From IMG/VR virus record IMGVR_UViG_3300002143_000235, positions 1-64,000 of that record: DNA of 64,000 bases; one strand, 5' to 3'. A program made the position numbers and the translations under genes. Positions within the stretch are counted from its first letter, which is position 1; every line of letters begins with the position of its first letter. Below, piece by piece: positions 13,413 to 41,755 of the stretch. The notes under the pieces were generated by a model. That model ran no database searches and was not told the DNA's origin. It saw only the letters and a list, made by a program, of their open reading frames with translations.

Positions 13413-13610
13413 ATGTTAACTAATATAAACGAATTTAAATCGGAAGCCCATAAATTTTGGTGGAATAGATTAGGACAATCTACAAAAATTGATATTTGTC
13501 GACGTTCTAGTTCTAAAGTTAGTGGGCTTAGTGGTTGTGGTTTATCAGATTTTAATCCTGATAAACTTTCAGATCATACAATTAAAGCTCTTTATAATTT
13601 GAATCATTAA
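13413..13610 (+). CDS. small leader-family protein
   Basis: MLTNINEFKSEA; GATATATAA upstream. Confidence 0.6.
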   Translation: MLTNINEFKSEAHKFWWNRLGQSTKIDICRRSSSKVSGLSGCGLSDFNPDKLSDHTIKALYNLNH

Positions 13611-14243: not shown

Positions 14244-15430
14244 TGAGAATCATATACACACAACAAGCCATTCCAAATCAGATAAATAAATCTATATTCT
14301 TAGCTGGTCCATCACTTCGTCCTGGACAGGATGGAATATCATGGCGTATAAATGCTTTAGAAATTCTTCGTGTACTTGAATACGATGGTGTTGTGTTTGT
14401 ACCTGAATCTGAAGATGGAAGTTTTGATGATAATTTCAACTGGAAAACACAAGTCATGTGGGAGTCGAAATGTCTACGTATGTCTGACAATATTTTATTT
14501 CACATTAATCGTAATATTGAATCTGGATTATTAGGTCTTACAACAAATGATGAATGGGGATTTTGGAAGGACTCAGGTAAATGTGTACTTTCTATTGAAT
14601 CTGGAGCAGACAAAACAGATTATCAAGAGTGGTGGGCTAAAGAACTTAAAGTTCCGACATTCAATGATTTATTTAGTGCACTTCGTCATATTATAAAGAT
14701 ACAACAAGATGCACCACGTGTTGATGGTGAACGAATGATACCACAAGAAATTTGGTTGCTTGATCAGTTTCAATCTTGGTATAAACAATTAAAAGCAAAT
14801 GGAAACTGGATCAGTGATGCTCGAGTTTTAAATACCTATCGCATTCCTTCAAACAATAAAATATTTGCATTTTCTCTTTGGGTAAACGTTTTTATTCGTA
14901 ATGAAAATCGTTACAAAAATAATGAATTTATATTCTCAAGACCTGATATCAGTTCATGTGTGATGTATTATCCAAATAATAATTTGATGGATACAGAGAT
15001 TGTTCTTGTATCTGAATTCAGATCACCAGTTAATAATACAAAAGGCCTTGTTTATGAAATACCGGGTGGTTCCAGTGTGAAACCTGGTGAAGATCCAATG
15101 GCTGTTGTTATTGAAGAACTCAAAGAAGAAACAGGAATCGGCGGGATGAATCTTGCACGACTTGAATACATTAGTGCACGTCAACTAGCAGCAACAATTC
15201 TTACACATAAATGTCATTTGTATGGTTATACTATGTCTGATGCAGAGTATATAAATGTTAAGAACAATGTAGGTAAGATTTTTGGAAACGAAGCTGACAC
15301 AGAAAGAACAGAACTACATATTTTTACACTGCAAGAGATTATAGATAATGATTATATTGATTGGTCGAATCTTGGTATGGTAATGAATGTATTAAACACA
15401 ACAACTATAAAAAACAGTCCTAATGTATAA
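14243..15430 (+). CDS. nucleoside 2-deoxyribosyltransferase-like plus Nudix hydrolase fusion
   Basis: SIFLAGPS..WR N-terminal domain; YEIPGGS..EELKEETGI Nudix box. Confidence 0.75.
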   Translation: MRIIYTQQAIPNQINKSIFLAGPSLRPGQDGISWRINALEILRVLEYDGVVFVPESEDGSFDDNFNWKTQVMWESKCLRMSDNILFHINRNIESGLLGLTTNDEWGFWKDSGKCVLSIESGADKTDYQEWWAKELKVPTFNDLFSALRHIIKIQQDAPRVDGERMIPQEIWLLDQFQSWYKQLKANGNWISDARVLNTYRIPSNNKIFAFSLWVNVFIRNENRYKNNEFIFSRPDISSCVMYYPNNNLMDTEIVLVSEFRSPVNNTKGLVYEIPGGSSVKPGEDPMAVVIEELKEETGIGGMNLARLEYISARQLAATILTHKCHLYGYTMSDAEYINVKNNVGKIFGNEADTERTELHIFTLQEIIDNDYIDWSNLGMVMNVLNTTTIKNSPNV

Positions 15431-15840
15431 TGTATACAACAATCAATGAATTTCGTACAAATGAAAGATATGACAATCATAATAGAGTAATACCGCGTGA
15501 TTTCTTCAATGAATCTAAATTATTGAAGTGTATGGGACAGCTAGCTTTAAAAATTCTTGATGGTAGAGTTCCTGAAGGAATAACTATTGAGATAGAAGAA
15601 TCTGGTGAAGCTTTCAATATTGCTTTATCTAATGAATATGATTGCTTATATGTTACAAACTATCCAATAACAGTTAATGGTGAAAATGTTTTTTTTGGTA
15701 CAACATATAATTCAAAAGCTTTGTACCCTATGGTATGTTATGATGATGATGTAGAATTTAATGTATTTGATGATCAAGGTAATTTTACAAATAAATTTAT
15801 TGAACAATTTGTAAATCAAACAGAAAATGTTCAGGCATGA
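15430..15840 (+). CDS. putative head-internal protein (leader family)
   Basis: MYTTINEFRTNE. Confidence 0.7.
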   Translation: MYTTINEFRTNERYDNHNRVIPRDFFNESKLLKCMGQLALKILDGRVPEGITIEIEESGEAFNIALSNEYDCLYVTNYPITVNGENVFFGTTYNSKALYPMVCYDDDVEFNVFDDQGNFTNKFIEQFVNQTENVQA

Positions 15841-16829
15841 TAACAACAATCAATGAATTTCGTGCAATTAATGAGATTGGTGAAGGTACGAAATCATATA
15901 ATTATACAATAGAACCATCACCTTTTGGTGGATATTCTGGATTTTTTATTACTGAACGTAATGAAGAATATGAAATTTATATGACACATACGTACACACA
16001 AGATGGTGAAAAAACAAATATTTCATTTGATTTAAAAGGATATGATCATGAAGCAGATAAAGAAACTAATACACATGATCAATATCGTATTATGACAACA
16101 ATTATATTAGTTGTAAAAGATGTATTAAAAAGAGAACCAGGTATTAATATTATTGAATTTGAGGCTAAAGAGAAAAAAATAGGGTCAACAAATCAACGAT
16201 TAATGTTATATCTAGCTTATGCTAAAAAACATCTTGGCCCAGAATGGCAAATATTAAAAGGTGTAAACTCCGCAACAATTATAAAAGGAAAACCAGGTTT
16301 AGAATATACAAAGAGTATTGATTCATTAAATGATGAATCAACTAATGAAAGTCTATCATTTCCAGCAGCACATGGCATCAACCAGGAAGTTGCTGTTGTT
16401 GATATTGATGGTAATCTCCAATACAGTGGAAGGGTGTCAAAGGTATCATTCACTGCACAGAAAGTTTTCTATGATGTAGTAAGTGATTATGACGGTACTA
16501 TTGAATGTGATATTGATTCAGTATTTGTAGAACGTTCTATTGGTATTATTTCTGAAACTGAAATGGAAGAGATGTTTGGTAAAGAAAAAACTGAAGAAAT
16601 TCTTACACGTAAAAATGAATCTAGGGCATCAAATTTACAATCTACAAATCTTACATATAAGAGTGTTGAACGTAATGACATTTTATGGCTTACGGTTATG
16701 CTAAAACCACGTAACTCAGCACCTGGTAACAGAATGGGTGAAATGGGTGTTGTTAAAGTTCGTGTACTTGATACTTTTTATGGTATGGATAAACTTAAAC
16801 ATTTGAAAGCAACAGATAAGATAATGTAA
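15837..16829 (+). CDS. putative head-internal polyprotein (three modules)
   Basis: MITTINEFRAINEI; internal STNES and RKNES. Confidence 0.7.
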   Translation: MITTINEFRAINEIGEGTKSYNYTIEPSPFGGYSGFFITERNEEYEIYMTHTYTQDGEKTNISFDLKGYDHEADKETNTHDQYRIMTTIILVVKDVLKREPGINIIEFEAKEKKIGSTNQRLMLYLAYAKKHLGPEWQILKGVNSATIIKGKPGLEYTKSIDSLNDESTNESLSFPAAHGINQEVAVVDIDGNLQYSGRVSKVSFTAQKVFYDVVSDYDGTIECDIDSVFVERSIGIISETEMEEMFGKEKTEEILTRKNESRASNLQSTNLTYKSVERNDILWLTVMLKPRNSAPGNRMGEMGVVKVRVLDTFYGMDKLKHLKATDKIM

Positions 16830-18476: not shown

Positions 18477-18550
18477 TTTTATTATTTTTCATATATAAAA
18501 GAAAAATTCACGAACATGTTTATATCAATAAATGAATACCGTAAATCAAA
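18467..18550 (+). repeat. promoter plus leader cassette, copy 1 (copy 2 at 18937-19020)
   Basis: tggtgtttaattttattatttttcatatataaaa...aacatgtttRtatcaataaatgaataccgtaaatcaa duplicated. Confidence 0.92.
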
Positions 18551-18887
18551 TGACAAAAAAACTAGTTTATCATCAGAAAAATATAATATACAAGAATCAG
18601 CTTTTCATGATGAATCTGAATATGCAATAACATTAGCCAATGAAAATGGATTTCAATTTTCTATAGATCAAAAAAATAATGCACAATATGTTTATACATT
18701 ACCTGTTAATATAGGTAATATTTCTACAGTAACATATAAACTGTTACGTATTCCTGGTTCATTTCAACAATGGCGTATTAATTGTGAAGTTGTATTTAAT
18801 GATACAATAAAACAGCCTGGAAAATTAAAAAAATCTTTGTTTTGTATCTCATCTTTATGTGATTTTACAGTTAATATTTCACAATAA
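18516..18887 (+). CDS. leader-family protein, paralog of last module of 18987-19955
   Basis: MFISINEYRKS; LANENGFQF..YVYT..TYKL vs IANSLGFAF..YVWT..EYRL. Confidence 0.6.
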   Translation: MFISINEYRKSNDKKTSLSSEKYNIQESAFHDESEYAITLANENGFQFSIDQKNNAQYVYTLPVNIGNISTVTYKLLRIPGSFQQWRINCEVVFNDTIKQPGKLKKSLFCISSLCDFTVNISQ

Positions 18888-18936: not shown

Positions 18937-19020
18937 TGGTGTTTAATTTTATTATTTTTCATATATAAAAAAAAAACCAACACAACATGTTTGTATCAAT
19001 AAATGAATACCGTAAATCAA
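18937..19020 (+). repeat. promoter plus leader cassette, copy 2
   Basis: see 18467-18550. Confidence 0.92.
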
Positions 19021-19955
19021 TCAATGAAACTATTACAAATTCACAAGATTTACTTACAGCATACCAATCATATGGTTTTGAATTAGATCGTAATACAGGT
19101 GGTATTGTTAAAGATTTATCAAATGATTTTTACATTATTATAAGATACGCTGATCCAATGGAAGAAATAAATGATACAACATTAGTTGTATGTAATGATG
19201 ATATTGAAAAATATATTGTTCTTACTGGTGATGATAATATCAAGACATTCCTAGATAATGGATTTAATGATTTTGAAAATGCTATTATTAACGATCCTAA
19301 TAAAGCCGATCAAATTGCACAACAATTTGGATTTGTTAATGAAATAATGGTTAATGAAACAAATCAAACATTAAATGGACACATAGGTGAATTTGATTGG
19401 AATGAAATTAATAATATTACAGCAAAATTACATGTTATTGGATTAAATGATGTTAAATTTTATTATGGAAATACAGATAATTTTCATTATTTGTATCCAG
19501 AATGGAATTTCATCATAAATAATGAAAAATATAAACTTGTAACACAAGATAAAGATTTAATAAATGGTGAATTTGTTATTCGTAAATATATAAATGGATT
19601 TTCGAAAGGATATGTTGTCAATGGATCATTAAATGATTGTATAACATATCTAACATCTATTATAAATGAACTTCATAATGAAGCTGTAAATCCAGTAGAT
19701 TATATGGGCCGTGACCAAGCTATTGAAATAGCAAATTCTTTAGGATTCGCTTTTGATATTTCATCAAAATACCATAGTCATTATGTATGGACTGAAAACA
19801 TTAACAGTTCTGTTATTAGTTCTATTGAATATCGATTATATAAAGTTAGTGGTATTCGATGGAAAATTTCAAGTCGTATAACTTATGCATTAATTAATTC
19901 TGAAAATGTTAGTGAAGTTAACACTATTAGTGATGTTTGTTGGTTTGATATTTAA
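18987..19955 (+). CDS. putative head-internal polyprotein
   Basis: MFVSINEYRKSINET; internal FVNEIMVNE and IINELHNEA. Confidence 0.7.
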   Translation: MFVSINEYRKSINETITNSQDLLTAYQSYGFELDRNTGGIVKDLSNDFYIIIRYADPMEEINDTTLVVCNDDIEKYIVLTGDDNIKTFLDNGFNDFENAIINDPNKADQIAQQFGFVNEIMVNETNQTLNGHIGEFDWNEINNITAKLHVIGLNDVKFYYGNTDNFHYLYPEWNFIINNEKYKLVTQDKDLINGEFVIRKYINGFSKGYVVNGSLNDCITYLTSIINELHNEAVNPVDYMGRDQAIEIANSLGFAFDISSKYHSHYVWTENINSSVISSIEYRLYKVSGIRWKISSRITYALINSENVSEVNTISDVCWFDI

Positions 19956-24152: not shown

Positions 24153-27100
24153 TTATAACTGATTATAATCAAAGTTAAAATTATAATCAAATACACTCAA
24201 ATTAACTGGATAGATATTCAGTTGTGGTTGGATAGTAATAGGTAAAGAGTATGATTTAATTGCTTTACGTGTACAACCATATCCTGAATGCCAATAGACC
24301 TCAACCACAAAGTATGGATCCACTAATTCATTAACAGTAAATCCTACTTGGTCAAGAACAGTTTTATAATCACGAATAATTTGAACATTTGGTAATCGAT
24401 CAATTGATGTTTTTTCCCATACTGAACTTAATCCAGGTACTTGTGTATGTTGTGTAATAAGATTACTAACCCATATTGCATTGTTGTAAAAAACGTAGCT
24501 ATCAACAAGATATGAAATGTTTGTCCATTGTTCTAATTGGAATGTACGAATCTTATATTCATACCAATTTTGTGGCGCAGCAGATGTAAATTCAACACGA
24601 ATATCATAATTGTTTGAACCTTCTGTTACTGGCTGTAAATAACCAGACACATCAAAATCAATACTATCAGCATATTCCTCAACTCTGTAATTTTTTGTCA
24701 TATATGTATCATGTTGGATAATGAAATCATTACGCATTTGGTACTTACCATTTATATCAGTAATTTTTGTACCAATTGGTATAATATTCTCAGTCAACCA
24801 ACGCTTAAGACCTAACAATTTTACTTTGACTTCGTCAAGTGAATATGCATCAACAAAATTACCATCCTCATCAGTGATACGATAATTTAATGAAAACAAA
24901 TTTGTTTTTCTATAGCCAGCATTACGAAGTGTTTCATATCCAACATTAGAATACGTATATCCAGCAACATCCTTGTTAAGTAAGTTGAGCAGTTCAAGAT
25001 TAAAAAGTTGACCAAATTTCTTGTTTTCCGGGTCGATGTTTTGAAAATATTCAGTGAATGTCAAATCGTTGTATCCAAAGAAATTGATAGCCTGGATAAC
25101 ACTCTTGTATGAAGAAAGTGAGTTAAACAATTCACCATAGATTTCGATGAGTTCTTTTCTTTTTCTATTAAGTAAAATCCAGTCAACACCTTCTTCTTTG
25201 ATATCAGCCTCACGAAATATAAAGAAATCTTGCATTTTAAGAATATTCAAGTTTCTGTTATCAAGATTAATTCGGTGACGTTCATCTTCATCCTCTGATT
25301 CACCATATACATCAAAATATGACACAACTTTAGGTAATACTGATACAGACACTTCTAAACGTCTATTGAGCATAATTGGATCACCATTGATATCTACAAA
25401 AGGCATAGTATTCTTAGGAACAACACACACACTTGTTTCATTTGTCACATTTACTGTAAAATACAATCTATTTGTTTGAACATCACTAATTGTAAATTTT
25501 AAACCAGCATTCTTTAATATTCCAAGTTGTTGTCCATCGGCATCCATATCTTTTGCTGTAAATACAACATCTTGTCCAGTTCTAAACCCCAGCAAACGTA
25601 AATCAATAGGTATTGATAATGATTGTAATTCAACATAATTTTCATTAAATACCCATAAATCATCAATAAGATTGACATCAGTAAGTAAAGTAAATTTAAT
25701 ATCTTCAACTAATTCTAGGTGAAGACGTGCTTTGTTCCAACCTTCAAACCCTGCACGATATCCAATAAATACTTGCATAGGGTCTGGCTCAATATCTCCA
25801 TCAAATGCTTCATCCGTAAATGGTATTGTATATGATAACGTATCAAATATAGTTTGTTGCACAAGTGGATTACTAATTTGTGTAATATCTGTATTTGGTG
25901 TGAAATTCAATTGCAATTGAATTTCACCATCCAGTCCACAAAGTGGTATCGGACCGTTGTATGCTGGAAAGTATGGAAACGCTGGAACTAATTGTGATCC
26001 AGAGAAGTCATATAAGAAGAAATCATTGATTTGGGTATTGTACCAAGTCCATCTAAATTTAGCGCGTTCAGCGAGGTCTGTGGTACCCATACGTGGATAA
26101 CGTATAAAGTAATCAGATACTATATTTATAGCAAATGCTAGTGCTTGATTCCAGAAAGATCCTTGATATGATAATGAAATACGTTGATCAGTAATAGCAA
26201 CAACATTATATGATCTATTTTGTATATTCATAAACGCACCATTTATACTCAATTTCTGACCAACTGAATAATAAGATGAAAAATCATATAGACCTGGTGC
26301 ACAAATAATTTCATTACCTGCTACTACACCACCGTTGTTCACTGTAGAATAGAGTGTTTCATATACAGCTACATCACCCATCTTTGGAAGGTAACCAAGA
26401 TTATATGATATATCTAAACGTTTTTCTGGATCACGAACATCAATCTGAATGATAGAAGTAGCTGGAACATTTACTACAATAATATTCAATGAATCAAGAA
26501 TTGGACCATGTGTTGTTACCCAGTCAGCAACAGTCTGATCATCATCAGTATTGAATGGTGTTGCATATTGAATACCATCAATTGTAATAATTAATTGTGA
26601 TTTAATATTGTTGATGTTCGTATCCATGTAACGTGTTACACAGTTTGTTGCATCTGTATTAACAAGTGTGATAATTATAGGAACATTCGGATATGCTGCA
26701 GTAATACGAATTGTATCATTTACTATATTTGTTGTTGTATTGAGTATATCAATTCCAATTTTTGATAATTCTACTGTGTAACCTGCAACAAATGCAGCAA
26801 GTGTTGTTGCCACATCAGTAGTGAATGGTGTATAATAATTTCGTCCATTAATAATAATAGCAAGACCACTTGGATCAATAACTGAAAATACGATAGATCG
26901 TTGATAAACTGAACTGTGCTCTGTATATTCATGATAAATATCAAGTGATTCCTTAACACTAATTGGATAAACATCATATGTTTGGGTTGTAACAATAAGT
27001 GGTGTTACGACTTCAGTATTAGATATACTTGAAAAATTTACAACAATATATGAATCTGTAAACTCTGTAGTAATTTCAAGTGTATCAGTATCAACATTAT

Positions 27101-28232
27101 ATGTAAGATCAACACCACCAGCCATCTCAGCTAAAGCATTACTGTATTGTGCGACAATTGTGTCATATGTAAGAGGTAATGAATAAACGTTATTATTATC
27201 CAATACAACTTCTTGATCGATTAAAATATTGTTTCCTGCAAGAAAAATCTGACATGTTACTGTCTCTGTTACAAGAGACGTATTAACAGTTATTGTACTA
27301 GTTGTTCTATCAATGGATTCAACAATATGTGTAGCAAGGTTAGTAAGTGATACTACACCATTATCTAATACTTGAATTTGATCATTAACCTTCAAAAATG
27401 AAGGAATATATGGCATATAAATTGTTTGACCATTAAAATCTGTACTACCATTACTTACCATAATATTAGATGTACGGATCTGAATATTTAACAACACACG
27501 ATCTCCAGCAATTGGTGTGAATGCACCAGGAGCAAGGAAGAATGCATCTTTTTGACGAACATTACAAACTGTATCAACCGTATAGAGTCCGTCTGCATCC
27601 GTATTACCAACTAATGATAATTTTTTATTTGGATAAAGCTTTGCTGTAATACTAGTTTCATTATAAGCTGGTTCACCAACAGTTTTTTGTACAAGTTCAA
27701 TCACGTCAAGCGGTACAATCTGTGCATTCAAGATGTTAAATGTAGGAAGTGCGTTGTCATTTGTTGTTGTCGTGTATACAAGAACACGACCAGTCTCGAC
27801 AGCCAGAATCTTGAATACTTGTGTGTTAATAATATTTGTATCAAAATCATTATTATGAAAACCATTCAAATCCGTAAAATTACACCACATTCCTTTATAA
27901 AAATCTTTCTCTATACCTGCAGCATAGATCCACTTTGTATTATAGTTTGCATCGTTGTTTACAACCTGAATATCAGTAATGGTATAGGCATTCAACGCAC
28001 CGGGTATGGTAGTCATCCCATTCGTGTTGAATGCCTGGAAGCGCTCAAGTGTTGCGCTAAATGTATTGTTGCTACCATCCAATTTTTCGAATGCGTAAAT
28101 GCCTTGTGTCTTGTATGTATCTACAGAATTCTTGTCAAAGAATATAGAAGAAGAGTGAACCAATGTCTCAGCATTGAAATCAGTATTTAACTGGTGTCCC
28201 TCTTTGTTGAAGAAGATCAAATTTTCTGTCAT
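24153..28232 (-). CDS. large virion structural protein (baseplate/tail-associated, tentative)
   Basis: 1359 aa, Thr/Val/Asn-rich beta composition with internal repeated modules (YYTPFTTDV / YATPFNTDD); TATATAA promoter. Confidence 0.55.
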   Translation of the reverse strand: MTENLIFFNKEGHQLNTDFNAETLVHSSSIFFDKNSVDTYKTQGIYAFEKLDGSNNTFSATLERFQAFNTNGMTTIPGALNAYTITDIQVVNNDANYNTKWIYAAGIEKDFYKGMWCNFTDLNGFHNNDFDTNIINTQVFKILAVETGRVLVYTTTTNDNALPTFNILNAQIVPLDVIELVQKTVGEPAYNETSITAKLYPNKKLSLVGNTDADGLYTVDTVCNVRQKDAFFLAPGAFTPIAGDRVLLNIQIRTSNIMVSNGSTDFNGQTIYMPYIPSFLKVNDQIQVLDNGVVSLTNLATHIVESIDRTTSTITVNTSLVTETVTCQIFLAGNNILIDQEVVLDNNNVYSLPLTYDTIVAQYSNALAEMAGGVDLTYNVDTDTLEITTEFTDSYIVVNFSSISNTEVVTPLIVTTQTYDVYPISVKESLDIYHEYTEHSSVYQRSIVFSVIDPSGLAIIINGRNYYTPFTTDVATTLAAFVAGYTVELSKIGIDILNTTTNIVNDTIRITAAYPNVPIIITLVNTDATNCVTRYMDTNINNIKSQLIITIDGIQYATPFNTDDDQTVADWVTTHGPILDSLNIIVVNVPATSIIQIDVRDPEKRLDISYNLGYLPKMGDVAVYETLYSTVNNGGVVAGNEIICAPGLYDFSSYYSVGQKLSINGAFMNIQNRSYNVVAITDQRISLSYQGSFWNQALAFAINIVSDYFIRYPRMGTTDLAERAKFRWTWYNTQINDFFLYDFSGSQLVPAFPYFPAYNGPIPLCGLDGEIQLQLNFTPNTDITQISNPLVQQTIFDTLSYTIPFTDEAFDGDIEPDPMQVFIGYRAGFEGWNKARLHLELVEDIKFTLLTDVNLIDDLWVFNENYVELQSLSIPIDLRLLGFRTGQDVVFTAKDMDADGQQLGILKNAGLKFTISDVQTNRLYFTVNVTNETSVCVVPKNTMPFVDINGDPIMLNRRLEVSVSVLPKVVSYFDVYGESEDEDERHRINLDNRNLNILKMQDFFIFREADIKEEGVDWILLNRKRKELIEIYGELFNSLSSYKSVIQAINFFGYNDLTFTEYFQNIDPENKKFGQLFNLELLNLLNKDVAGYTYSNVGYETLRNAGYRKTNLFSLNYRITDEDGNFVDAYSLDEVKVKLLGLKRWLTENIIPIGTKITDINGKYQMRNDFIIQHDTYMTKNYRVEEYADSIDFDVSGYLQPVTEGSNNYDIRVEFTSAAPQNWYEYKIRTFQLEQWTNISYLVDSYVFYNNAIWVSNLITQHTQVPGLSSVWEKTSIDRLPNVQIIRDYKTVLDQVGFTVNELVDPYFVVEVYWHSGYGCTRKAIKSYSLPITIQPQLNIYPVNLSVFDYNFNFDYNQL

Positions 28233-30962: not shown

Positions 30963-31192
30963 TGTTAACAAGCAAATTCTTAAAGCAATACATACTTCAA
31001 CATGAAGCATTGAAACTAATGACCAATTTCAAACGTACTCATGGTCTTACTTTACATGATAAAATATTGATGAAGAATGTAAATAGATATTTAAATAAAT
31101 TACAAAATTTAAATACTACACCTGATGTAGGTGACGTTGTAATTGATAAGAAAAATATTGAAATCTACAGACGGCGTTATACGTTAAAATAA
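30962..31192 (+). CDS. hypothetical protein
   Basis: 76 aa ORF, TAATG overlap. Confidence 0.55.
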   Translation: MLTSKFLKQYILQHEALKLMTNFKRTHGLTLHDKILMKNVNRYLNKLQNLNTTPDVGDVVIDKKNIEIYRRRYTLK

Positions 31193-31500
31193 CGGAATCC
31201 TTGAAATCCCTTCATTGGAACTGGAACAATTCTATGTAATTGTCCAGTTCTTTCAATGAATTTTCCTATCCACTGTTGTCCAGTAGTAGAGCATGTGAAA
31301 GTTTTTTCACTCTTTCCTGATACAATGTGGTATCCGATTACATTTCCATTGTAACAAATATAACATTTTGAACCAGTATTAACATCTGGAAAATTTGCTA
31401 CTTTAAAATTAAGTATAGCACCTTGTTCAGCAGCATCTAATTCTTTTTGATACTCTTCCCATTTTATTGATTTAGGAATAGTTATAATAATATCTCTCAT
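31177..31500 (-). CDS. hypothetical protein
   Basis: 107 aa ORF ending the minus-strand leader-family operon. Confidence 0.65.
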   Translation of the reverse strand: MRDIIITIPKSIKWEEYQKELDAAEQGAILNFKVANFPDVNTGSKCYICYNGNVIGYHIVSGKSEKTFTCSTTGQQWIGKFIERTGQLHRIVPVPMKGFQGFRYFNV

Positions 31501-31532
31501 ATTTTTGTATTATAATTTATTAATAAATGATA

Positions 31533-32135
31533 TTAATACCAAGGTTTGTTAGTTTTGACAGCTGAAAAATTATAATTAAAATTATTACCAACATCACCTT
31601 TCTTTATGATGTTAACTACTGCACCTTTTTTGTAATAATTTGGAATATCTTCATTTATATCCATTGTATCAAGTTTAGCAATTATTTCATTTGCACGTTT
31701 CTTAGAAATACGAAGAAATTGAATCATTCTTTCTTTAAACTCATTTACATTTTTATAAGTCTCTTCAAATCCCATTGATTGTCTTGAACCAATTTCTTCA
31801 CTGTGTTTAATAAATATGTAGTACACAGGATCGATATATTTTTCTTTCACTCTTACATGTACCCATTCGTCCACAATATCAACATTAACATCGTATATAG
31901 GCCATTTTAATTTGATCTCTTTAGCTACTTTGTATGCATCATCAATATCTTCTTGACCAGGTGTTTCATCTCCACTGTGTTCACGTGTTGTAAACATAAT
32001 TTCATTGTCATCAGAATTACCATCATTATAATATAATGTGGTACCTATATAGTTTTCCATAAAATCTATAATTTGTTGAAAGTCTGAACTACGTGATTCA
32101 TTTATTTTTTTCCATTCGTTAATTGTTGTTATCAT
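31533..32135 (-). CDS. putative head-internal protein (leader family)
   Basis: MITTINEWKKINES. Confidence 0.75.
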   Translation of the reverse strand: MITTINEWKKINESRSSDFQQIIDFMENYIGTTLYYNDGNSDDNEIMFTTREHSGDETPGQEDIDDAYKVAKEIKLKWPIYDVNVDIVDEWVHVRVKEKYIDPVYYIFIKHSEEIGSRQSMGFEETYKNVNEFKERMIQFLRISKKRANEIIAKLDTMDINEDIPNYYKKGAVVNIIKKGDVGNNFNYNFSAVKTNKPWY

Positions 32136-32755
32136 AGTAGTGGTTTTGAATTGTTTCCTATTTCTGATCCATCTGAAGTTCTTCCAGCGTTGATCTCTTG
32201 AGCTGTCACCAGCTTTATTTTTGAATCTGGTTGATCAAGTAAATCCATAATAATAGCTTGTTTTTCAGGTGTAAATGATACATCATAAATTTCAAAATAC
32301 CTGTAACTTTCTACATTATTGAATACACCCTTATCAAATATAACAGTTTTGTATGTCGCTGTAAAATCAGATACCCCAAGTGCATCAAAGATGTGTTCTT
32401 CTTCAACTAATTCTTCCATCAATTCGCGATCGATACTTGTTTCACGACCTTGTTTCATATTGAACCATTCAAGGTATTCATTAAGATTACTTTCTGGCAT
32501 CCAAAATCTAAGATCTGGTGTCTCCCGTTCGAATTCACAACCTAATCCTTGTAGAAAAGATAATGCTTCCGTATGGTACTCTGTAGCACCACCAAATGGA
32601 GTATAGATAGTATTTCCCTTAGCTGCTGAACTATGATTGACACATAACAAGTATTTACCATCTATGACGATACGAGCCAAAGCAGAACAACTCACTCTGA
32701 TTTTTTGATCAGTTGATTCGTATATTTTACGCCATTGGTTTATTGTTGTTATCAT
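32132..32755 (-). CDS. SMODS-associated NUDIX-like domain with capsid-targeting-like leader
   Basis: MITTINQWRKIYES; IRVSCSALARIVIDGKYLL..YTPFGGA..DLRF..WFN..RETSIDRELMEEL. Confidence 0.65.
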   Translation of the reverse strand: MITTINQWRKIYESTDQKIRVSCSALARIVIDGKYLLCVNHSSAAKGNTIYTPFGGATEYHTEALSFLQGLGCEFERETPDLRFWMPESNLNEYLEWFNMKQGRETSIDRELMEELVEEEHIFDALGVSDFTATYKTVIFDKGVFNNVESYRYFEIYDVSFTPEKQAIIMDLLDQPDSKIKLVTAQEINAGRTSDGSEIGNNSKPLL

Positions 32756-33351
32756 TATTCAAAGTTAACAATTTTATATACATTATTTGGTAAATATGTT
32801 TTAAGATATTCTTGATTACTTTTAGATGTAGTTATTTTAACTATTTTTTTTACAATATTAGTTATATCACCAGATGTTGAGCGAAACTCTTTTTCATGAC
32901 TAAGATTTTCACCGGGCATACTATCATCATATTCATAAATAAGAGGTAAATCTTTAATATCAAACATTAATCTAACATCTATTTCTTGACCATCGTCAAA
33001 TTGTTTAAATACCCATAAGTCACTATCAACAGTAAAAGATATTGCATTATTAAACTGTTTTAATGTATTTGAATTAATAATTTCAATTAAATGTTTTATA
33101 GTAGTAAAATGATAAACGAATTGTATTGCTGATATTTCACCACCAGCCCACTCATATTCCTTCGAATCACCGTCTAAAATCACAAAATAAATTAGATCGT
33201 CTCCATCATTATTAATTTTTGATATTCGTGCATTATGATAATCACCATTCCAATCATGGACATAAACTGGTTGATTGATTGTAAATATTGGTTTTGTTTT
33301 ATATGAAATACTTTCGTTAAATTGTTTCCATTCATTAATTGTTGTTATCAT
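32755..33351 (-). CDS. leader-family protein, C-terminal ADP-ribosyltransferase-like motifs (tentative)
   Basis: MITTINEWKQFNES; YHFTT..ISFT..EKE. Confidence 0.5.
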   Translation of the reverse strand: MITTINEWKQFNESISYKTKPIFTINQPVYVHDWNGDYHNARISKINNDGDDLIYFVILDGDSKEYEWAGGEISAIQFVYHFTTIKHLIEIINSNTLKQFNNAISFTVDSDLWVFKQFDDGQEIDVRLMFDIKDLPLIYEYDDSMPGENLSHEKEFRSTSGDITNIVKKIVKITTSKSNQEYLKTYLPNNVYKIVNFE

Positions 33352-34211
33352 ATCTTGTCAGGTGGGCATTCTATCCATTCATTACCTGTCCATTTAAACC
33401 AACCTGGTTCATTAGGACAGCCAACTTCATTTTCTATTTCTACTGATATTTTATCAGATTGTTTATAATCAATTGCAACAGCGTCTTTCATAAAGTATTC
33501 TAAGTCTTCAGAAAACGGATTTGCATCACCCAAACAAACAAATATTTTTATTTGATCTGGATTATAAAATACATCACCGTATTCACCATTACAAATAATA
33601 GCGATGGCTGTTGCATATCTTTGCAATTTATCATTATCAATAACATCATTTTGAACAGAAACAAAATGTATTGTTTCTGTTACAGATCTATCTGACATTA
33701 AACTTAATGGCTGATCAGTTGGAGAAAAATATCCTAATTGTTTTTCTATTTCAATACGTCCTGAATCTTTATCATTTAAAAAATTAGGACAATATCCGTC
33801 TTCAAGTTCTAAAACACGCTTTTGAACATACGACATTATTGTAATATATTCTTCACCATTATCATGAAGAAAATCATCTTGAGGTACATTTTCAAGGTTT
33901 TCTTCTAAAAGTGTTTTTACATGATTAAGAACCTCATTCCATAAACGAAAACCTTTTTGCATACAAACAAGGGCCATTGTAATACAAAATTGATTATGCC
34001 AAAATTTTGAACCGTGCCATGAATTATCAACATTGTTAAAATAACCTTGAAGTTTATCATTTACAAAATTATCAATAGCTGGTGTTAATTCAGCTCCAAA
34101 AGTATCAGCAATAGAATCATCATAATACTGACTCGGCCAATATGACATTGATCCTTCTTTAATTAAATTATTCTTGTTATGAATGCGCCATTCATTAATT
34201 GTCGTTATCAT
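33348..34211 (-). CDS. putative head-internal protein (leader family)
   Basis: MITTINEWRIHNKNNLIKEG. Confidence 0.7.
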   Translation of the reverse strand: MITTINEWRIHNKNNLIKEGSMSYWPSQYYDDSIADTFGAELTPAIDNFVNDKLQGYFNNVDNSWHGSKFWHNQFCITMALVCMQKGFRLWNEVLNHVKTLLEENLENVPQDDFLHDNGEEYITIMSYVQKRVLELEDGYCPNFLNDKDSGRIEIEKQLGYFSPTDQPLSLMSDRSVTETIHFVSVQNDVIDNDKLQRYATAIAIICNGEYGDVFYNPDQIKIFVCLGDANPFSEDLEYFMKDAVAIDYKQSDKISVEIENEVGCPNEPGWFKWTGNEWIECPPDKI

Positions 34212-34729
34212 AAAGTATAAAGTTTACTTTCTATCTCTGGAAATTCACCAGGAAATAATTCAAAATGACGTTCGTATGACCCATCGATTCTAATGGGTTT
34301 ATCCATTACTAAAAATTTTCCATCACCAAAATCATCACCTATCTGACCTTTGATATATTGATTGTCAGATACTTTATAATAAATAATATCATTTAATTTT
34401 AACGATGATAAATCTGTAACTAATTTATAAGCTGCTTCAACTGGTGCACTATTGTTTAGAACATCTAATGCTTTTTTAATAGCCCCAGGATTAAGAATAT
34501 TTACTTGATTATTTTCATCTTTTACTGCAAGGTACGTACCAGTAGGAATGTGATATCCCATAGGATTGTGTGGAACTTGTACATTAAATTTTTTATATAA
34601 ATCAAGTCGTTCGCCGTAACCCAAAATGGTTACCACACCGCGATTATAGAGATCAAGCTTTTTACCGATAAGCTTATCGTAATGTGCATTTTCATTGTGT
34701 TGCATCCACTCATTAATTGTTGTTATCAT
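34208..34729 (-). CDS. putative head-internal protein (leader family; true start 34729)
   Basis: MITTINEWMQHNEN with ATGA overlap at 34726-34729. Confidence 0.7.
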   Translation of the reverse strand: MITTINEWMQHNENAHYDKLIGKKLDLYNRGVVTILGYGERLDLYKKFNVQVPHNPMGYHIPTGTYLAVKDENNQVNILNPGAIKKALDVLNNSAPVEAAYKLVTDLSSLKLNDIIYYKVSDNQYIKGQIGDDFGDGKFLVMDKPIRIDGSYERHFELFPGEFPEIESKLYTL

Positions 34730-35574
34730 ATCTTTATCATGTACCAATTGAACCAGTAATATACTGGTTTTTTTATATAAATTGTTTTTTCTTTGTAGAT
34801 AGCTTTGATTCTATTTTCATCACTATGAATAACATCAATTGCATCACCCTCTAATATCCTTATGTACTGACCAAGTTCAGTCTGTACAATAATTTCATGT
34901 GCTACAGATCTGTATACACCAGGTTTCACCTTAAACCAATCCTTTATGTGTGACCAGACACGTCCTACAACACGTATTTGAGATTCTTTGTCAAAGCTTT
35001 TCATGTCTGGTGTAACAAACTGTGGTCTATCACCTAGTTCACTATCATTACCAACATTTAAGAATTTACCCCATATTTCATCTTCCATATCGTTTAATTT
35101 GAAACGGATATAGATATTTAAACCAAGTCCATGTGAGCATGGAACCATTTGCATAATACGCAGTCCAGAAATAGTTATTACATCCTGGTCATTCAATGTT
35201 TTCATGTTAAGATAAGCAGCAATACCATTCGGAAACATCTGCTTAATTACCATAGTTGCATTGTGGTAATTTTGTATTGTACTTTTTTTAGAACCTGTTG
35301 GATGAGCACCAAACCGTGCACTCCACGTACTCATTGGATTATTATTAAAATAAATTGCTGCTGGTACTAAACGGTCAGATTTTATATCTGTGTCACCTTG
35401 TTGAATTTTTTTTGATGATTTAGGATTTGGACAAGAATCATCACGCATCCAATCAGGAAGTTCATAATTTGGATCAAAACAAATATCTGTAAAATCAACA
35501 CTATTTGACGTACTACCGTCAAGATAAGGATTAAAATTTTCTAAAACTTGTTTTTTTGTTTGTAAGTACTTCAT
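34726..35574 (-). CDS. hypothetical protein with CTS-like N-terminus
   Basis: MKYLQTKKQVLEN; TGATATATAA upstream. Confidence 0.65.
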   Translation of the reverse strand: MKYLQTKKQVLENFNPYLDGSTSNSVDFTDICFDPNYELPDWMRDDSCPNPKSSKKIQQGDTDIKSDRLVPAAIYFNNNPMSTWSARFGAHPTGSKKSTIQNYHNATMVIKQMFPNGIAAYLNMKTLNDQDVITISGLRIMQMVPCSHGLGLNIYIRFKLNDMEDEIWGKFLNVGNDSELGDRPQFVTPDMKSFDKESQIRVVGRVWSHIKDWFKVKPGVYRSVAHEIIVQTELGQYIRILEGDAIDVIHSDENRIKAIYKEKTIYIKKPVYYWFNWYMIKI

Positions 35575-35645
35575 GTCAATTTATATATCAATTTCAAACA
35601 TTTTGTATTATAATTAATACAATTAAAAAAAAATATATTATCTTT

Positions 35646-35849
35646 ATGGCAACAAAAAGTAAACACCGTAAAAATCATAAAGCAAAGGTTCAATCGCGTA
35701 ATAATCAAAAGTTACAAGAAAAAAAACATCATACACATCGTCTAACTAAAATGTTTGCAGAAATGCTAAAAGAACAACAAGAAAACATTACAAAAGAAGA
35801 TACAAATGTTACTGATGTAATACTACCTGAAACAGTGTCAATTACATAA
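35646..35849 (+). CDS. small basic protein (likely start MATKSKHRK)
   Basis: Lys/His-rich ORF. Confidence 0.6.
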   Translation: MATKSKHRKNHKAKVQSRNNQKLQEKKHHTHRLTKMFAEMLKEQQENITKEDTNVTDVILPETVSIT

Positions 35850-35859
35850 TAACAAACAT

Positions 35860-36531
35860 ATGGAAAATGATTATAAACCACCTGTTTTTAAAAACAGGCA
35901 TAACGAAAAGTACGATACCGTTGATGGTGTTAAATGGGATTCTAGAGCGTGTGCAGTTGTTGCTCACGTATGGTGTCAAGTAATCCACACAAATGACATG
36001 ATCACGAATTATGTTCTTGTAGGCAAACGTGGAACTGGTGGTGACAATCCAGGTTTACTTAATCTTCCGTGTGGATATATTGATTGGGATGAAACATTAG
36101 CAGAAGCTGCTGCACGTGAAGTGTGGGAAGAAACTGGTCTTGATCTTAATTTTTATGCTGACAAAATCAGTGTGATGGCATTGGATGAACCTTGGTACGT
36201 TAATACAAATCCAACTGAAAATCGTCAAAATATATCATTACATACAGCAGTTGTTATCACACTGAACGAGACTGATAAACTTCCTGAATTGTCTCTTGAC
36301 AACATGGAAGAGGATGAAAGTGATGGTGCTTACTGGTTTCCAATTCACGATATCCTTGAATCGGATCCTGAATTGTGGGCTTTTAAACACAAAGAGCGTA
36401 TCATTCATTTTATGAATTACTTAGTTGCTTTTCTTGATGAAAATGTTCCTGATGTTCTTGATGAAAATGTTCCTTACTTAGTTGATTTTCTTGATGAAAA
36501 TGCTCCTGATATTTCTAGTGAACTAGATTAA
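35860..36531 (+). CDS. Nudix hydrolase
   Basis: LPCGYIDWDETLAEAAAREVWEETGL Nudix box; C-terminal LDEN(V/A)P x3 repeat. Confidence 0.9.
   Translation: MENDYKPPVFKNRHNEKYDTVDGVKWDSRACAVVAHVWCQVIHTNDMITNYVLVGKRGTGGDNPGLLNLPCGYIDWDETLAEAAAREVWEETGLDLNFYADKISVMALDEPWYVNTNPTENRQNISLHTAVVITLNETDKLPELSLDNMEEDESDGAYWFPIHDILESDPELWAFKHKERIIHFMNYLVAFLDENVPDVLDENVPYLVDFLDENAPDISSELD
36418..36512 (+). repeat. short tandem repeat TCTTGATGAAAATGYTCCT x3 in coding tail
   Basis: direct reading of sequence. Confidence 0.9.
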
Positions 36532-39484: not shown

Positions 39485-41755
39485 TTAAATATTACCATAC
39501 TGTGGTAGTTTAACCTGCGGTGATGCATCATCAACAAGAATTGTAAGATGTGCATCATTTACAAACGATTGGTTTAATACAATATTACGTTTCCCTGTAG
39601 CAATAGGCTGATTGAACACAAATAAATTAGTAATATACCAACGTTTTAAATTACCTTGATTACTCATAGTATCATTTCCTCCTATAAACATATCACTTGT
39701 ATGTGTAAATAGATCTGGTACAATATCAAATATGCGTCCTTTTAACTTAATTAACTTAGAATCAGTATTTAGCATACCGTCTTCAGTTTGACGCTTATAT
39801 ACTACAATATCAAGCTTCTGTTTGATTTGATCCATACTGACTAAAAAACATCTCCATTCACCATTTGTCATAACATCAGCAATCGGTAATGAATACACAG
39901 ACTGATTGAATGTGAACGTAAATAAGCCATCAAACAGATTAACTTTGTAACCCTTGTTTGTGGTATAATCGTAATTACTAAAAATTGTTGTATCATGTGT
40001 CGGATCATACAATTCAGGTTTAAACCAGAACGCTATTGATCTGTTGTCGGCCTTTCCAACAACACCATCTTTGTAATTGTACTCAACAAGTTTAACACCA
40101 GGTGATTTCACCGGCATATCATAATGTTGTTTTGATATAGTAAGCGTTGCATTCCAGATATCTGTAACAATGTGTTTAACTGATGGTGCAACAGCTTTGA
40201 TATGATTCATAACTGTTGTATCTGTAATTTGTTGTGACGGATTAACAACACCAATAGAGTCTTTATCCGGTGCAATCTGTGCTCCGTATTCATCTGTATC
40301 AATATCAAAGAGTCCATCAAGTGTAGTATATTTAACAAGAGAATCTGTAATATCTTTTGCTGTTTGCCCTTGTGTTGTATTTGCATACTGACGATTTGCA
40401 TTTTGATCGTATTTTTTAAGCATAACACGGTAGTATGTCTCAGCCAGCATTAATCCACGTGATGGGAACATCTGTTCGACCTCCCACAATTGATTCATGT
40501 TACAGAAATACAAATAATCCTTTTTACTTGGTCTAAACTCTACACCAAATACACGCTTGAATGTATCCTTCATAATGTGAATTTCAAACGATTGAATAAG
40601 ATCCAGGTTAAATCCAGAAAAAGTAACGTTCTCAGTAGGAAATGCGTTGTCAGGAACAATAATTCGCATATCCTTCATTGCAATGACATTTGTCAATGTG
40701 TGAGTGTGTAAAAAATGATCAGTACCTTTCTTATCTGTATCTGTGAGAAAATACTGAACAGCCCAAGAGTTAGTTGCCTCAACATACTGATTCAATTGAT
40801 TTTGTAGATCAATTTGATTCTGAAATAACGTTGTATCATTCAACTGTTTGAACATACTTGTTGAACATGCATCACCGCAATCAGTAGTCTCATTAAGTCC
40901 TGGTGTTACAATTGCACATGATGAACAGCAAGAGCCATCAACTTTATCAGCACAACCATCAATACATGGGTCCGAAGGTGTTGGTGTTATTGGTTTTGGT
41001 AAACATTGCGATTTTAGACCATACTTTGCAGTTGTCTTGTAATTTGCAGAAATGTTTTGAAAATCACCTAATAGTTCAAGATCTTCAAGTACTACATTAC
41101 CTGTTCCATTATTTGTAAATGAGAATTGAAAGTTGGTAAACTTTAATCTCTCGAATCTACTTTTACGTAGATTATCTTCAGTTAAGAATGTCCAATCAGA
41201 CCAGTGTCGTCCTTGTGTTGCAGTATAACGATACCTGATCGTTATATCACTCTCTGATCCTGTAATAAATGCAATATTGTATCCAGTGATTGCAAAGACT
41301 TTGTACGTATCCTGATTCATGTAGACGCGTGTATCACCAGGCCCAAGGATAATACCATCAGTTGCTTCAATAAACGGTAATCGTGTTCCATTTACGGTCA
41401 TTGACACCAACTGGATAGGTTGAGCATCAGTAATTACCGTAGTAAATTTAAATTCTAACCAAACATCACTATTTGTAGGAAAACTTGGTATTTCATTAAA
41501 ATCAAGAGATAGTGGTTGCCAGTTACTATACAATTGATTATCAAAAGTCCATCTGTATTCGATGTTAAAATAATTTGTTGTACTAAGACCATTAGCAATA
41601 TAAGACCATCCAGTAAATTCATTTACATGTGCAATTCCTGGAAGGTGACGTACTATAAATGATTGTCCATCAGCTATAAAATTACCTTCTTCTATTTCGA
41701 ATGTAATTATTAATGACTGTTCTAATGTGTCGTTAATTGAAAAATGATTGATCAT
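39485..41755 (-). CDS. virion structural protein, T4 gp14 neck-like middle region plus C-terminal LamG-like domain (tentative)
   Basis: FEIHIMKDTF..PSKKDYLYF..LWEV; SIAFWFK..WRCFLV..ITNLFVFN. Confidence 0.5.
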   Translation of the reverse strand: MINHFSINDTLEQSLIITFEIEEGNFIADGQSFIVRHLPGIAHVNEFTGWSYIANGLSTTNYFNIEYRWTFDNQLYSNWQPLSLDFNEIPSFPTNSDVWLEFKFTTVITDAQPIQLVSMTVNGTRLPFIEATDGIILGPGDTRVYMNQDTYKVFAITGYNIAFITGSESDITIRYRYTATQGRHWSDWTFLTEDNLRKSRFERLKFTNFQFSFTNNGTGNVVLEDLELLGDFQNISANYKTTAKYGLKSQCLPKPITPTPSDPCIDGCADKVDGSCCSSCAIVTPGLNETTDCGDACSTSMFKQLNDTTLFQNQIDLQNQLNQYVEATNSWAVQYFLTDTDKKGTDHFLHTHTLTNVIAMKDMRIIVPDNAFPTENVTFSGFNLDLIQSFEIHIMKDTFKRVFGVEFRPSKKDYLYFCNMNQLWEVEQMFPSRGLMLAETYYRVMLKKYDQNANRQYANTTQGQTAKDITDSLVKYTTLDGLFDIDTDEYGAQIAPDKDSIGVVNPSQQITDTTVMNHIKAVAPSVKHIVTDIWNATLTISKQHYDMPVKSPGVKLVEYNYKDGVVGKADNRSIAFWFKPELYDPTHDTTIFSNYDYTTNKGYKVNLFDGLFTFTFNQSVYSLPIADVMTNGEWRCFLVSMDQIKQKLDIVVYKRQTEDGMLNTDSKLIKLKGRIFDIVPDLFTHTSDMFIGGNDTMSNQGNLKRWYITNLFVFNQPIATGKRNIVLNQSFVNDAHLTILVDDASPQVKLPQYGNI

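What the first reader, a model, noticed from the sequence alone, without database searches (positions are those of the whole stretch)
32132..32755. CBASS-type (SMODS-associated) NUDIX domain on a packaging leader: anti-defence candidate
Seen: motifs IRVS..RIVIDGKYLL, PFGG, DLRF, RE..RELMEEL, which I recognise as resembling SMODS-associated NUDIX domains. Known: that domain accompanies cyclic-oligonucleotide signalling systems. Inference: an injected enzyme that degrades nucleotide immune signals before phage gene expression.
Basis: partly seen in the sequence, partly recalled or inferred. Interest (0 to 1): 0.62.

Follow-up and report, generated by a model that had tools for sequence, protein, structure and literature searches.

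The report
Phage Nudix enzyme with packaging leader
A giant uncultured phage encodes the soluble half of a bacterial CBASS immune effector (a Nudix-type nucleotide domain). Its membrane anchor is replaced by a short tag that about 26 phage genes share, so it is probably loaded into the virus head and delivered with the DNA as a counter-immunity tool, though no activity has been measured.

Summary
ORF 32132-32755 (-), 207 aa, matches Pfam Sa_NUDIX (PF18167) at E 5.5e-28 over the whole domain and folds as a Nudix domain (pLDDT 92.9). The generic NUDIX model does not match.

It matches only the cytoplasmic part of CBASS "2TM effector" models (Cap16 type). It has no membrane segment, and the 314-kb phage record holds no CD-NTase.

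In place of the anchor sits a 14-residue leader, found on 26 ORFs of this phage, 18 of them in the window. Five lie in a tandem cassette around this gene. A close relative swaps that cassette's content for ADP-ribosyltransferase and GNAT genes.

The leader ends in hydrophobic-x-Glu motifs. The same motif is most enriched in the phage's protease-scaffold protein, as expected for a T4-like capsid-targeting propeptide.

More than 130 stand-alone homologue clusters exist, mostly on large phage contigs, with or without a leader. The Nudix-box residues are invariant and dN/dS is 0.10.

Packaging and anti-defence function are inferred, not shown. Nudix chemistry cuts diphosphate bonds, not the phosphodiesters of cyclic oligonucleotides. 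The likelier mechanisms are therefore binding of the signal or hydrolysis of diphosphate-containing signals.

I call it a new variant of known kinds.

The parts
32132..32755 (-). Complete ORF, 207 aa: leader plus stand-alone Sa_NUDIX domain
   Evidence: ORF list. Pfam PF18167 E 5.5e-28. AF2 pLDDT 92.9. dN/dS 0.10 against the 83%-identical orthologue in L003.
32714..32755 (-). N-terminal leader, residues 1-14. This copy has Gln instead of Glu at position 7 and Tyr instead of Asn at position 12.
   Evidence: Leader consensus from 26 ORFs. Codons vary synonymously between copies. In the model it is a separate, lower-confidence helix at residues 5-15. Many homologues lack it.
32153..32704 (-). Sa_NUDIX domain, residues 18-201
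   Evidence: PADLOC CBASS '2TM effector' models match only their C-terminal parts, e.g. PDLC00667 positions 72-264 of 299. Every listed structural match is a Nudix-fold protein, best Z 10.0 to 3oga.
32396..32446 (-). Nudix-box helix region, residues 104-120, with R104, E105, R110, E111, E114, E115
   Evidence: Invariant in 13 phage homologues. Also invariant when two genuine CBASS effectors and a bacterial stand-alone homologue are added. Helix 109-119 in the model.
32579..32599 (-). PFGG..E segment, residues 53-59 (first half of a split Nudix box)
   Evidence: P53, G55, G56 and E59 are invariant in the phage clade. E59 is Lys in the two CBASS effectors.
31533..34729 (-). Tandem cassette of five leader-bearing genes (173, 287, 198, 207 and 200 aa) joined by 1- or 4-base start/stop overlaps
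   Evidence: The five proteins share only the first 14-20 residues.
34726..35574 (-). Conserved first gene of the operon (282 aa, no leader, no family)
   Evidence: 90% identical to its counterpart in the relative L003, while the cassette between the flanks differs.
31177..31500 (-). Conserved last gene of the operon (107 aa, no leader)
   Evidence: 89% identical to its counterpart in L003.

Best explanation
The gene encodes a soluble, probably catalytically competent Sa_NUDIX domain. It is the same domain that forms the cytoplasmic part of CBASS 2TM-NUDIX (Cap16-type) effectors. It sits in a jumbo phage related to the Mahaphage, Lak and PTm1 group, whose hosts are probably Bacteroidota. The membrane anchor is replaced by a 14-residue leader of the form M-I-T-[TS]-I-N-E-[FW]-[KR]-x-x-N-E-[SN]. 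Inferred: the leader works like the T4 capsid-targeting sequence. It docks the protein on the scaffolding core of the prohead, the prohead protease trims it after a Glu, and the mature enzyme travels in the head and enters the cell with the DNA. Inferred: once inside, it removes a nucleotide-derived immune signal before any phage gene is expressed. It would do so either by Mg-dependent hydrolysis of a diphosphate-containing signal or precursor, or by binding the ligand that Cap16-type effectors sense. Shown: domain identity, fold, conserved metal-binding residues, absence of a TM segment, absence of a CD-NTase, the shared leader, the hypervariable cassette, and purifying selection. Not shown: packaging, cleavage, substrate, and any effect on defence.
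For: Domain.
Soluble version of a CBASS effector: the two plasmid CBASS operons carry the same domain behind TM segments next to CD-NTases. The phage protein has no TM-grade segment: KD19 maximum 1.39, against 2.05 and 2.07 in the effectors. The phage record shows no SMODS or DncV-like NTase.
Catalytic residues R110, E111, E114, E115 and R104, E105 are invariant. dN/dS is 0.10.
Leader: found on 26 ORFs, reversed-pattern control 0. Synonymous codon variation points to selection on the peptide. The same leader sits on 43 further ORFs of related IMG/VR contigs, including two ART-PolyVal and one GNAT. The relative's cassette carries ART-PolyVal and GNAT genes next to the Nudix gene. One leader gene carries a polyvalent-protein domain, LPD29.
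Cleavage motif: every leader has hydrophobic-x-Glu. [AVILFMY]-N-E is more enriched in the protease-scaffold fusion than in any other of 427 ORFs (11 found, about 2 expected, p about 1e-5). The capsid protein has one at residues 57-59.
Head module: portal, then S77-like protease fused to scaffold, then Gp23-like capsid protein.
Literature: T4 CTS biology (PMC3012670, PMC9026906). Prediction that Nudix, ART and Macro proteins are packaged in myovirus heads (PMC9503650).
Against: There is no virion proteomics and no cultured relative. No sequencing run was listed.
The protease match is below Pfam's cut-off (24.9 bits against 27).
This copy's leader deviates at both putative cleavage positions (Gln7, Tyr12), so processing may differ.
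The largest group of homologues has no leader at all, so packaging is not needed for the domain's function.
Cyclic oligonucleotides lack the diphosphate bond that Nudix enzymes cut.
A bacterial stand-alone homologue sits in an ordinary chromosomal context with no CD-NTase nearby, so the soluble form need not be immune-related.
A review reports that mutating Cap16's NUDIX domain does not abolish toxicity (PMC10419184). The domain's role even within CBASS is therefore unclear.
Confidence: 0.45

Rival explanations
1. Non-catalytic decoy. The soluble domain acts as a sponge for the cyclic nucleotide that Cap16-type effectors sense, or it co-assembles with the host effector's cytoplasmic domain and blocks its oligomerisation (dominant negative). 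Hydrolysis plays no part.
For: The protein matches exactly the ligand-facing part of the CBASS 2TM effectors. Cyclic oligonucleotides are not Nudix substrates (established Nudix chemistry). Cap16 toxicity is reported not to need the NUDIX catalytic residues (PMC10419184). Non-enzymatic Nudix-fold sensors such as NrtR are among the structural matches. Phage sponges are an established strategy (Acb2, Tad1/2, Acb4; papers listed).
Against: The phage clade keeps R110, E111, E114, E115 and several further invariant Glu residues (E59, E76, E119, E155). E59 is Lys in the two CBASS effectors. That pattern looks like a metal-dependent enzyme rather than a nucleotide-binding sponge.
Confidence: 0.25
2. 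A nucleotide-housekeeping or host-takeover Nudix. The enzyme processes ADP-ribose, NAD or NAD-capped RNA, dinucleoside polyphosphates or alarmones. It may partner the ADP-ribosyltransferases of the same cassette. It has no specific link to immune signalling.
For: The best structural matches are NTP and ADP-ribose pyrophosphatases. An ART-PolyVal gene lies directly upstream in the relative. A leaderless homologue lies beside T4-type RNA ligase 1 and an HD hydrolase. A bacterial homologue sits in a non-defence context. Phage Nudix proteins such as T4 NudE act on ADPR, FAD and Ap3A (PMC9503650).
Against: The window already holds two ordinary NUDIX genes, at 35860-36531 and 14243-15430. The sequence belongs specifically to the defence-associated Sa_NUDIX clade, and no generic Nudix model matches. 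It sits in a hypervariable, fast-evolving cassette.
Confidence: 0.2
3. The leader is not a packaging signal. It could be a shared tag for another purpose (localisation, turnover, translation initiation in a host without Shine-Dalgarno use) or simply a recombination handle for cassette shuffling. The Nudix protein would then act only after being made in the infected cell.
For: Leader genes lie among replication and nucleotide-metabolism genes rather than beside the head module. The upstream ATATATA element is shared with both capsid and replication genes, so it gives no timing information. Twenty-six cargo proteins is a large number. The protease-substrate fold test gave no answer (not evidence either way).
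Against: Aromatic, basic and N-E positions are conserved through different codons. The terminal Glu motif recurs in the scaffold and the capsid protein. The cargo includes ART, GNAT and LPD29, which are typical of injected proteins (PMC5512222). In T4 the IP and alt genes are likewise scattered.
Confidence: 0.3

Closest known systems
Cap16-type CBASS effector (2TM + Sa_NUDIX), e.g. the effectors in L024 (E. faecalis plasmid) and L025 (Hymenobacter plasmid)
   Same: The same Pfam domain over its full length, 27-30% identity. R20, D81, R83, R104, E105, R110, E111, E114 and E115 are all shared. PADLOC 2TM-effector models match.
   Different: No transmembrane segment and no adjacent CD-NTase. It is phage-encoded and carries a 14-residue leader instead. 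E59 is Lys in the effectors. It belongs to a separate, large clade of stand-alone proteins of about 190-205 aa found on phage contigs.
T4 internal proteins IPI-III and Alt, carrying the capsid-targeting sequence
   Same: A short N-terminal propeptide shared by otherwise unrelated proteins. A hydrophobic-x-Glu ending that fits a T4-type prohead protease. A hypervariable locus between conserved flanks. ADP-ribosyltransferase among the cargo (PMC3012670, PMC9026906).
   Different: The leader sequence is different. The scale is much larger (26 ORFs against a handful). The phage lineage is distant and has a protease-scaffold fusion. Packaging and cleavage are unproven here.
Virion-packaged phage Nudix proteins predicted by Iyer et al. 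2022 (T4 NudE-like and NadM-like clades)
   Same: The idea that myoviruses load Nudix, ART and Macro enzymes into heads to counter NAD/ADPr-derived signals (PMC9503650).
   Different: That work infers packaging from fusions to MuF, portal or protease, or from late-operon position, and names the NudE and NadM clades. Here the domain belongs to the Sa_NUDIX clade and the inferred route is a detachable leader.
Anti-CBASS and anti-Thoeris proteins Acb1 (2H phosphodiesterase), Acb2/Acb4 and Tad1/Tad2 (sponges)
   Same: The proposed role: removing a nucleotide immune signal.
   Different: A different protein family, judged by the Pfam match alone; I did not compare it directly with any Acb or Tad sequence. 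Those proteins are made after infection. This one would be derived from the effector's own ligand-facing domain and delivered ready-made.
Polyvalent proteins of phages and conjugative elements
   Same: The same toolbox (ART-PolyVal, GNAT, LPD29, nucleotide-processing enzymes) delivered with the DNA (PMC5512222).
   Different: Here the domains are separate small proteins, each with its own leader, rather than one giant polypeptide. A few occur as two leader-headed modules in one ORF (P0008, P0057; ORF 9830-10915).

Membership tests
Pfam PF18167 Sa_NUDIX | Profile match above the curated cut-off across the domain | tested here: met
   98.7 bits against a cut-off of 25, E 5.5e-28, profile positions 1-193 of 199. 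98.3 bits in the six-frame search.
Pfam PF18167 Sa_NUDIX | Nudix fold with a conserved R-E-x-x-E-E helix | tested here: met
   AF2 pLDDT 92.9 with helix 109-119. Every listed PDB match is a Nudix-fold protein, Z up to 10.0. R110, E111, E114 and E115 are invariant.
Pfam PF18167 Sa_NUDIX | Genomic association with a SMODS/CD-NTase (the 'SMODS-associated' in the name) | tested here: not met
   No PF18144 or PF21654 match in the 313,708-bp record. The record is about 80% complete, and the PF21654 search had no positive control. The neighbouring genes are leader-tagged proteins of unknown function.
Cap16-type CBASS 2TM-NUDIX effector | N-terminal transmembrane helices | tested here: not met
   Maximum 19-residue Kyte-Doolittle mean is 1.39 and no window exceeds 1.6. 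The two plasmid effectors reach 2.05-2.07 in their N-terminal 60-80 residues. PADLOC profiles match only from position 39-78 onward.
Cap16-type CBASS 2TM-NUDIX effector | Activation by a cyclic nucleotide and membrane disruption | not testable with these tools
   Needs biochemistry. The primary paper (Duncan-Lowey 2021) was not held.
T4-type capsid-targeted (CTS) internal/ejected proteins | A short N-terminal propeptide shared by otherwise unrelated proteins | tested here: met
   26 ORFs against 0 for the reversed pattern. Cassette proteins align only over residues 1-20. 43 more ORFs on related contigs have a mean column identity of 9% beyond the leader.
T4-type capsid-targeted (CTS) internal/ejected proteins | A propeptide ending in a Glu motif that matches the prohead protease's sites in scaffold and capsid proteins | tested here: inconclusive
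   All 26 leaders have hydrophobic-x-Glu and 19 have h-N-E at positions 5-7. h-N-E is most enriched in the protease-scaffold protein (p about 1e-5) and occurs at capsid-protein residues 57-59. No cleavage data exist. The Nudix copy has I-N-Q and I-Y-E.
T4-type capsid-targeted (CTS) internal/ejected proteins | A T4 gp21-like (S77) prohead protease encoded in the head module | tested here: inconclusive
   Peptidase_S77 at E 1.9e-6 but 24.9 bits, below the cut-off of 27. The match lies in a 789-aa ORF between the portal and the Gp23-like capsid protein. No PDB sequence match to the protease part.
T4-type capsid-targeted (CTS) internal/ejected proteins | Presence of the mature protein in virions and delivery into the host | not testable with these tools
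   Uncultured phage. No sequencing run was listed.
Generic housekeeping NUDIX (PF00293) | Match to the general Nudix profile with an unsplit G-x5-E-x7-R-E-U-x-E-E-x-G-U box | tested here: not met
   PF00293 is not reported at E <= 1 for this protein, yet it matches the neighbouring gene 35860-36531 at 3.8e-15. The box is split by an insertion of about 45 residues (helix 62-70, strand 83-87, helix 88-100).

The most novel reading that the evidence does not exclude
A clade of giant Bacteroidota-type phages uses one universal 14-residue leader to load two dozen or more unrelated cargo proteins into the capsid as a ready-made arsenal. One cargo is a captured ligand-facing domain of a CBASS pore effector. 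It acts as a pre-emptive sink for the immune signal from the moment of DNA entry. This would be a new anti-CBASS family with a new delivery logic, and the leader would serve as a sequence key for listing injected effectors in uncultured phages.
Probability: 0.3. Interest if true: 0.8.

Novelty: new variant of a known kind. Interest (0 to 1): 0.6.

Why it matters
If the reading holds, it adds a counter-defence family built from the host effector's own sensor domain. The family is widespread: more than 130 clusters, mostly on phage contigs of 20-650 kb, and absent from PHROGs and from cultured phages in the collection searched. It would show that such a tool can be delivered ready-made. The leader also gives a simple, testable rule for predicting which proteins of uncultured jumbo phages are capsid cargo. 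Most of that cargo has no known family. Finally, the T4 capsid-targeting idea would extend to a distant lineage and a larger scale.

Tried and rejected
- Protease domain (residues 1-205) plus the Nudix protein in complex prediction: no answer, score 0.00. Not evidence either way.
- The look-up of sequencing runs on 31000-36000: none was listed.
- PHROGs: no family for this protein or its cassette neighbours.
- PDB sequence search: no match.
- ATATATA upstream element as a late promoter: rejected. 66 of 126 occurrences lie 5-60 nt upstream of ORFs, but these include the ribonucleotide reductase and topoisomerase genes as well as the capsid genes, so the element says nothing about timing.
- A strict pattern for the different leader of the LR745206 homologue found only that one gene in the 635-kb record. 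Leaders on other lineages' contigs (L022, L023) look similar in style but are too loose to call.
- Genome-contig scan: only MAG contigs of DPANN archaea, Elusimicrobia and Chloroflexota turned up. My guess is that they are mis-binned phage. None was a Cap16-type gene.
- The primary papers on Cap16 (Duncan-Lowey 2021) and on the original SMODS-NUDIX definition (Burroughs 2015) were not held. Statements about them rest on reviews (PMC10419184, PMC9226505) and on my own knowledge.

Full report
**The object.** Pfam places residues 18-201 in Sa_NUDIX (PF18167): E 5.5e-28, 98.7 bits against a cut-off of 25, profile positions 1-193 of 199. No other family matches at E <= 1, not even generic NUDIX, which does match the neighbouring gene 35860-36531. 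An AlphaFold2 model built on 13 homologues has mean pLDDT 92.9. Every listed PDB match is a Nudix-fold protein, the best being Z 10.0 to YfaO/NudI and 9.5 to the NadM ADP-ribose pyrophosphatase domain.

**The genome.** The window is the first 64 kb of a 313,708-bp IMG/VR virus record with 32% GC, estimated about 80% complete. Its head module runs portal, then an S77-like protease fused to a repetitive scaffold (789 aa), then a Gp23-like capsid protein. The capsid protein's nearest relatives are uncultured 460-735-kb phages (up to 38% identity), followed by Tenacibaculum PTm1, Sphingomonas PAU and Prevotella Lak phages. From this I infer a host in Bacteroidota.

**Relation to CBASS.**
- PADLOC's CBASS "2TM effector" models and the reverse-transcriptase-associated NUDIX model all match, but only over their C-terminal parts.
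- Two genuine CBASS operons were recovered from plasmids. In E. faecalis a DncV-like CD-NTase precedes a 307-aa effector. In Hymenobacter (Bacteroidota) a SMODS cyclase and two accessory genes precede a 269-aa effector.
- Both effectors carry Sa_NUDIX (252 and 218 bits) behind hydrophobic N-termini.
- The phage protein is 27-30% identical to them and shares R20, D81, R83, R104, E105, R110, E111, E114 and E115. It has no TM-grade segment.
- The phage record contains no CD-NTase.
- The protein is therefore the soluble half of a Cap16-type effector. It is a member of the Pfam family but not of the effector architecture or of a CBASS operon.

**The wider family.** A profile search found 136 clusters, nearly all stand-alone proteins of 175-240 aa. 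Many lie on contigs of 20-650 kb, and one is annotated as being from an uncultured marine phage. The largest group starts directly at the domain. Others carry short N-terminal extensions in several lineage-specific styles that end in a similar aromatic-x-Glu-Ser pattern. Two proteins carry two leader copies. A leaderless member lies in a T4-like contig beside RNA ligase 1, and a bacterial member lies in an ordinary chromosomal setting. Against the 83%-identical orthologue, dN/dS is 0.10. PHROGs has no family for it. Among deposited phage genomes only one uncultured 635-kb record has a close homologue.

**The leader.**
- A loose pattern finds 26 leader ORFs in the record, 18 of them in the window. 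The reversed pattern finds none.
- The consensus is M-I-T-[TS]-I-N-E-[FW]-[KR]-x-x-N-E-[SN]. Codons differ between copies while the residues stay the same, so selection acts on the peptide.
- Five leader genes, including this one, form a tandem cassette with 1- or 4-base start/stop overlaps. They share nothing beyond residues 1-20.
- In a closely related phage the flanking genes are 89-94% identical but the cassette differs. It holds a GNAT, an ART-PolyVal ADP-ribosyltransferase, the Nudix gene and two others.
- The exact leader coding pattern occurs in 31 stretches of IMG/VR, often several times per contig. The 43 further ORFs it heads include two ART-PolyVal, a DUF3990 and a GNAT. Most have no family.
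- Other leader genes in the window carry LPD29, a polyvalent-protein domain, and an AAA_33 kinase domain.

**Why a packaging propeptide is the best reading.** T4 internal proteins and Alt carry 10-19-residue capsid-targeting propeptides. These dock on the scaffolding core, and gp21 removes them after a Glu. The T4 cargo is a diverse, fast-changing set of anti-restriction and host-modifying proteins (PMC3012670, PMC9026906). Here every leader contains hydrophobic-x-Glu. The narrower motif [AVILFMY]-N-E is more enriched in the protease-scaffold protein than in any other of 427 ORFs (11 found, about 2 expected, p about 1e-5, including five tandem repeats). The capsid protein has one at residues 57-59, about where T4 gp23 is cut (my recollection of the T4 site, roughly residue 65). 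This is consistent but indirect. The Nudix copy itself deviates (I-N-Q and I-Y-E), which in T4 terms might alter processing without preventing targeting.

**Mechanism.** The idea that myoviruses package Nudix, ART and Macro enzymes to pre-empt NAD/ADPr-based immunity has been proposed, for the NudE and NadM clades (PMC9503650). The Nudix box here is intact, and the phage clade conserves additional acidic residues, including E59, which is Lys in the two CBASS effectors. I therefore favour an active metal-dependent enzyme. Nudix enzymes cleave diphosphate linkages, which 3'-5' cyclic oligonucleotides lack. Direct degradation of classical CBASS signals is therefore unlikely. The concrete alternatives are hydrolysis of diphosphate-containing signals or precursors, sequestration of the Cap16 ligand, or interference with Cap16 assembly. 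A housekeeping role is less likely because the window already has two ordinary NUDIX genes.

**Verdict.** The domain call is certain. The leader is real and probably a capsid-targeting propeptide (about 0.65). The anti-signal role is plausible (about 0.45), with the chemistry unresolved. This is a new architectural variant combining two known ideas. It is not a new kind of system.

Noticed in passing
window 10334-10915, 10912-11310, 11350-11745, 13413-13610, 13650-14243, 15430-15840, 15837-16829, 18516-18887, 18987-19955, 54238-55242(-), 60204-60713, 61969-63051, 63048-63332; also G000:C1 81824, 109192(-), 112854(-), 148353, 167243(-), 267952, 280317, 312832(-): Besides the five-gene cassette, 21 further ORFs start with the same leader. 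Most have no Pfam family. Exceptions are LPD29 (13650-14243) and an AAA_33 P-loop kinase (60204-60713), which also matches a CARF-associated AAA model in PADLOC.
   Followed up: partly
window 9830-10915 (+); proteins P0008 and P0057: Some ORFs carry a second, internal leader copy (here at 10334). This suggests two leader-headed modules in one polypeptide that a protease could separate, like a small polyprotein.
   Followed up: no
G000:C1:94971-97340 (-), outside the window: The prohead protease appears fused to the scaffold in one 789-aa ORF. It contains five tandem repeats of about 14 residues, each with a [VI]-A-N-E motif, followed by an acidic low-complexity stretch.
   Followed up: partly
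genome-wide, e.g. upstream of window 35574(-), 60204(+), 7141(-), 56931(+): The heptamer ATATATA occurs 126 times counting both strands, and 66 ORFs have a copy 5-60 nt upstream of their start. It is a candidate phage promoter element shared by capsid and replication genes.
   Followed up: partly
window 35860-36531 (+) and 14243-15430 (+): Two further Nudix genes: a MutT/NudE-like one (phrog_1198), and a fusion of a nucleoside 2-deoxyribosyltransferase-like domain with NUDIX. The phage therefore carries three distinct Nudix proteins within 22 kb.
   Followed up: no
window 56931-60179 (+): A single 1082-aa ORF combines GyrB-like ATPase/Toprim domains and a GyrA/topo IV subunit A domain, making a fused type II topoisomerase.
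   Followed up: no
window 24153-28232 (-) and 39485-41755 (-): Large ORFs of 1359 and 756 aa with no Pfam family. Both are conserved in the relative L003.
   Followed up: no
L003:8701-10004 (relative phage contig): In the relative, a leader-tagged GNAT acetyltransferase and an ART-PolyVal ADP-ribosyltransferase (with a weak C-terminal GNAT signal) occupy the cassette positions held by unrelated genes in the window.
   Followed up: partly
L032 and L046 (IMGVR_UViG_3300002138_000145 and _000147): These IMG/VR contigs carry leader ORFs whose first 22 residues are identical to those of window genes. They may be other assemblies of the same phage population.
   Followed up: no
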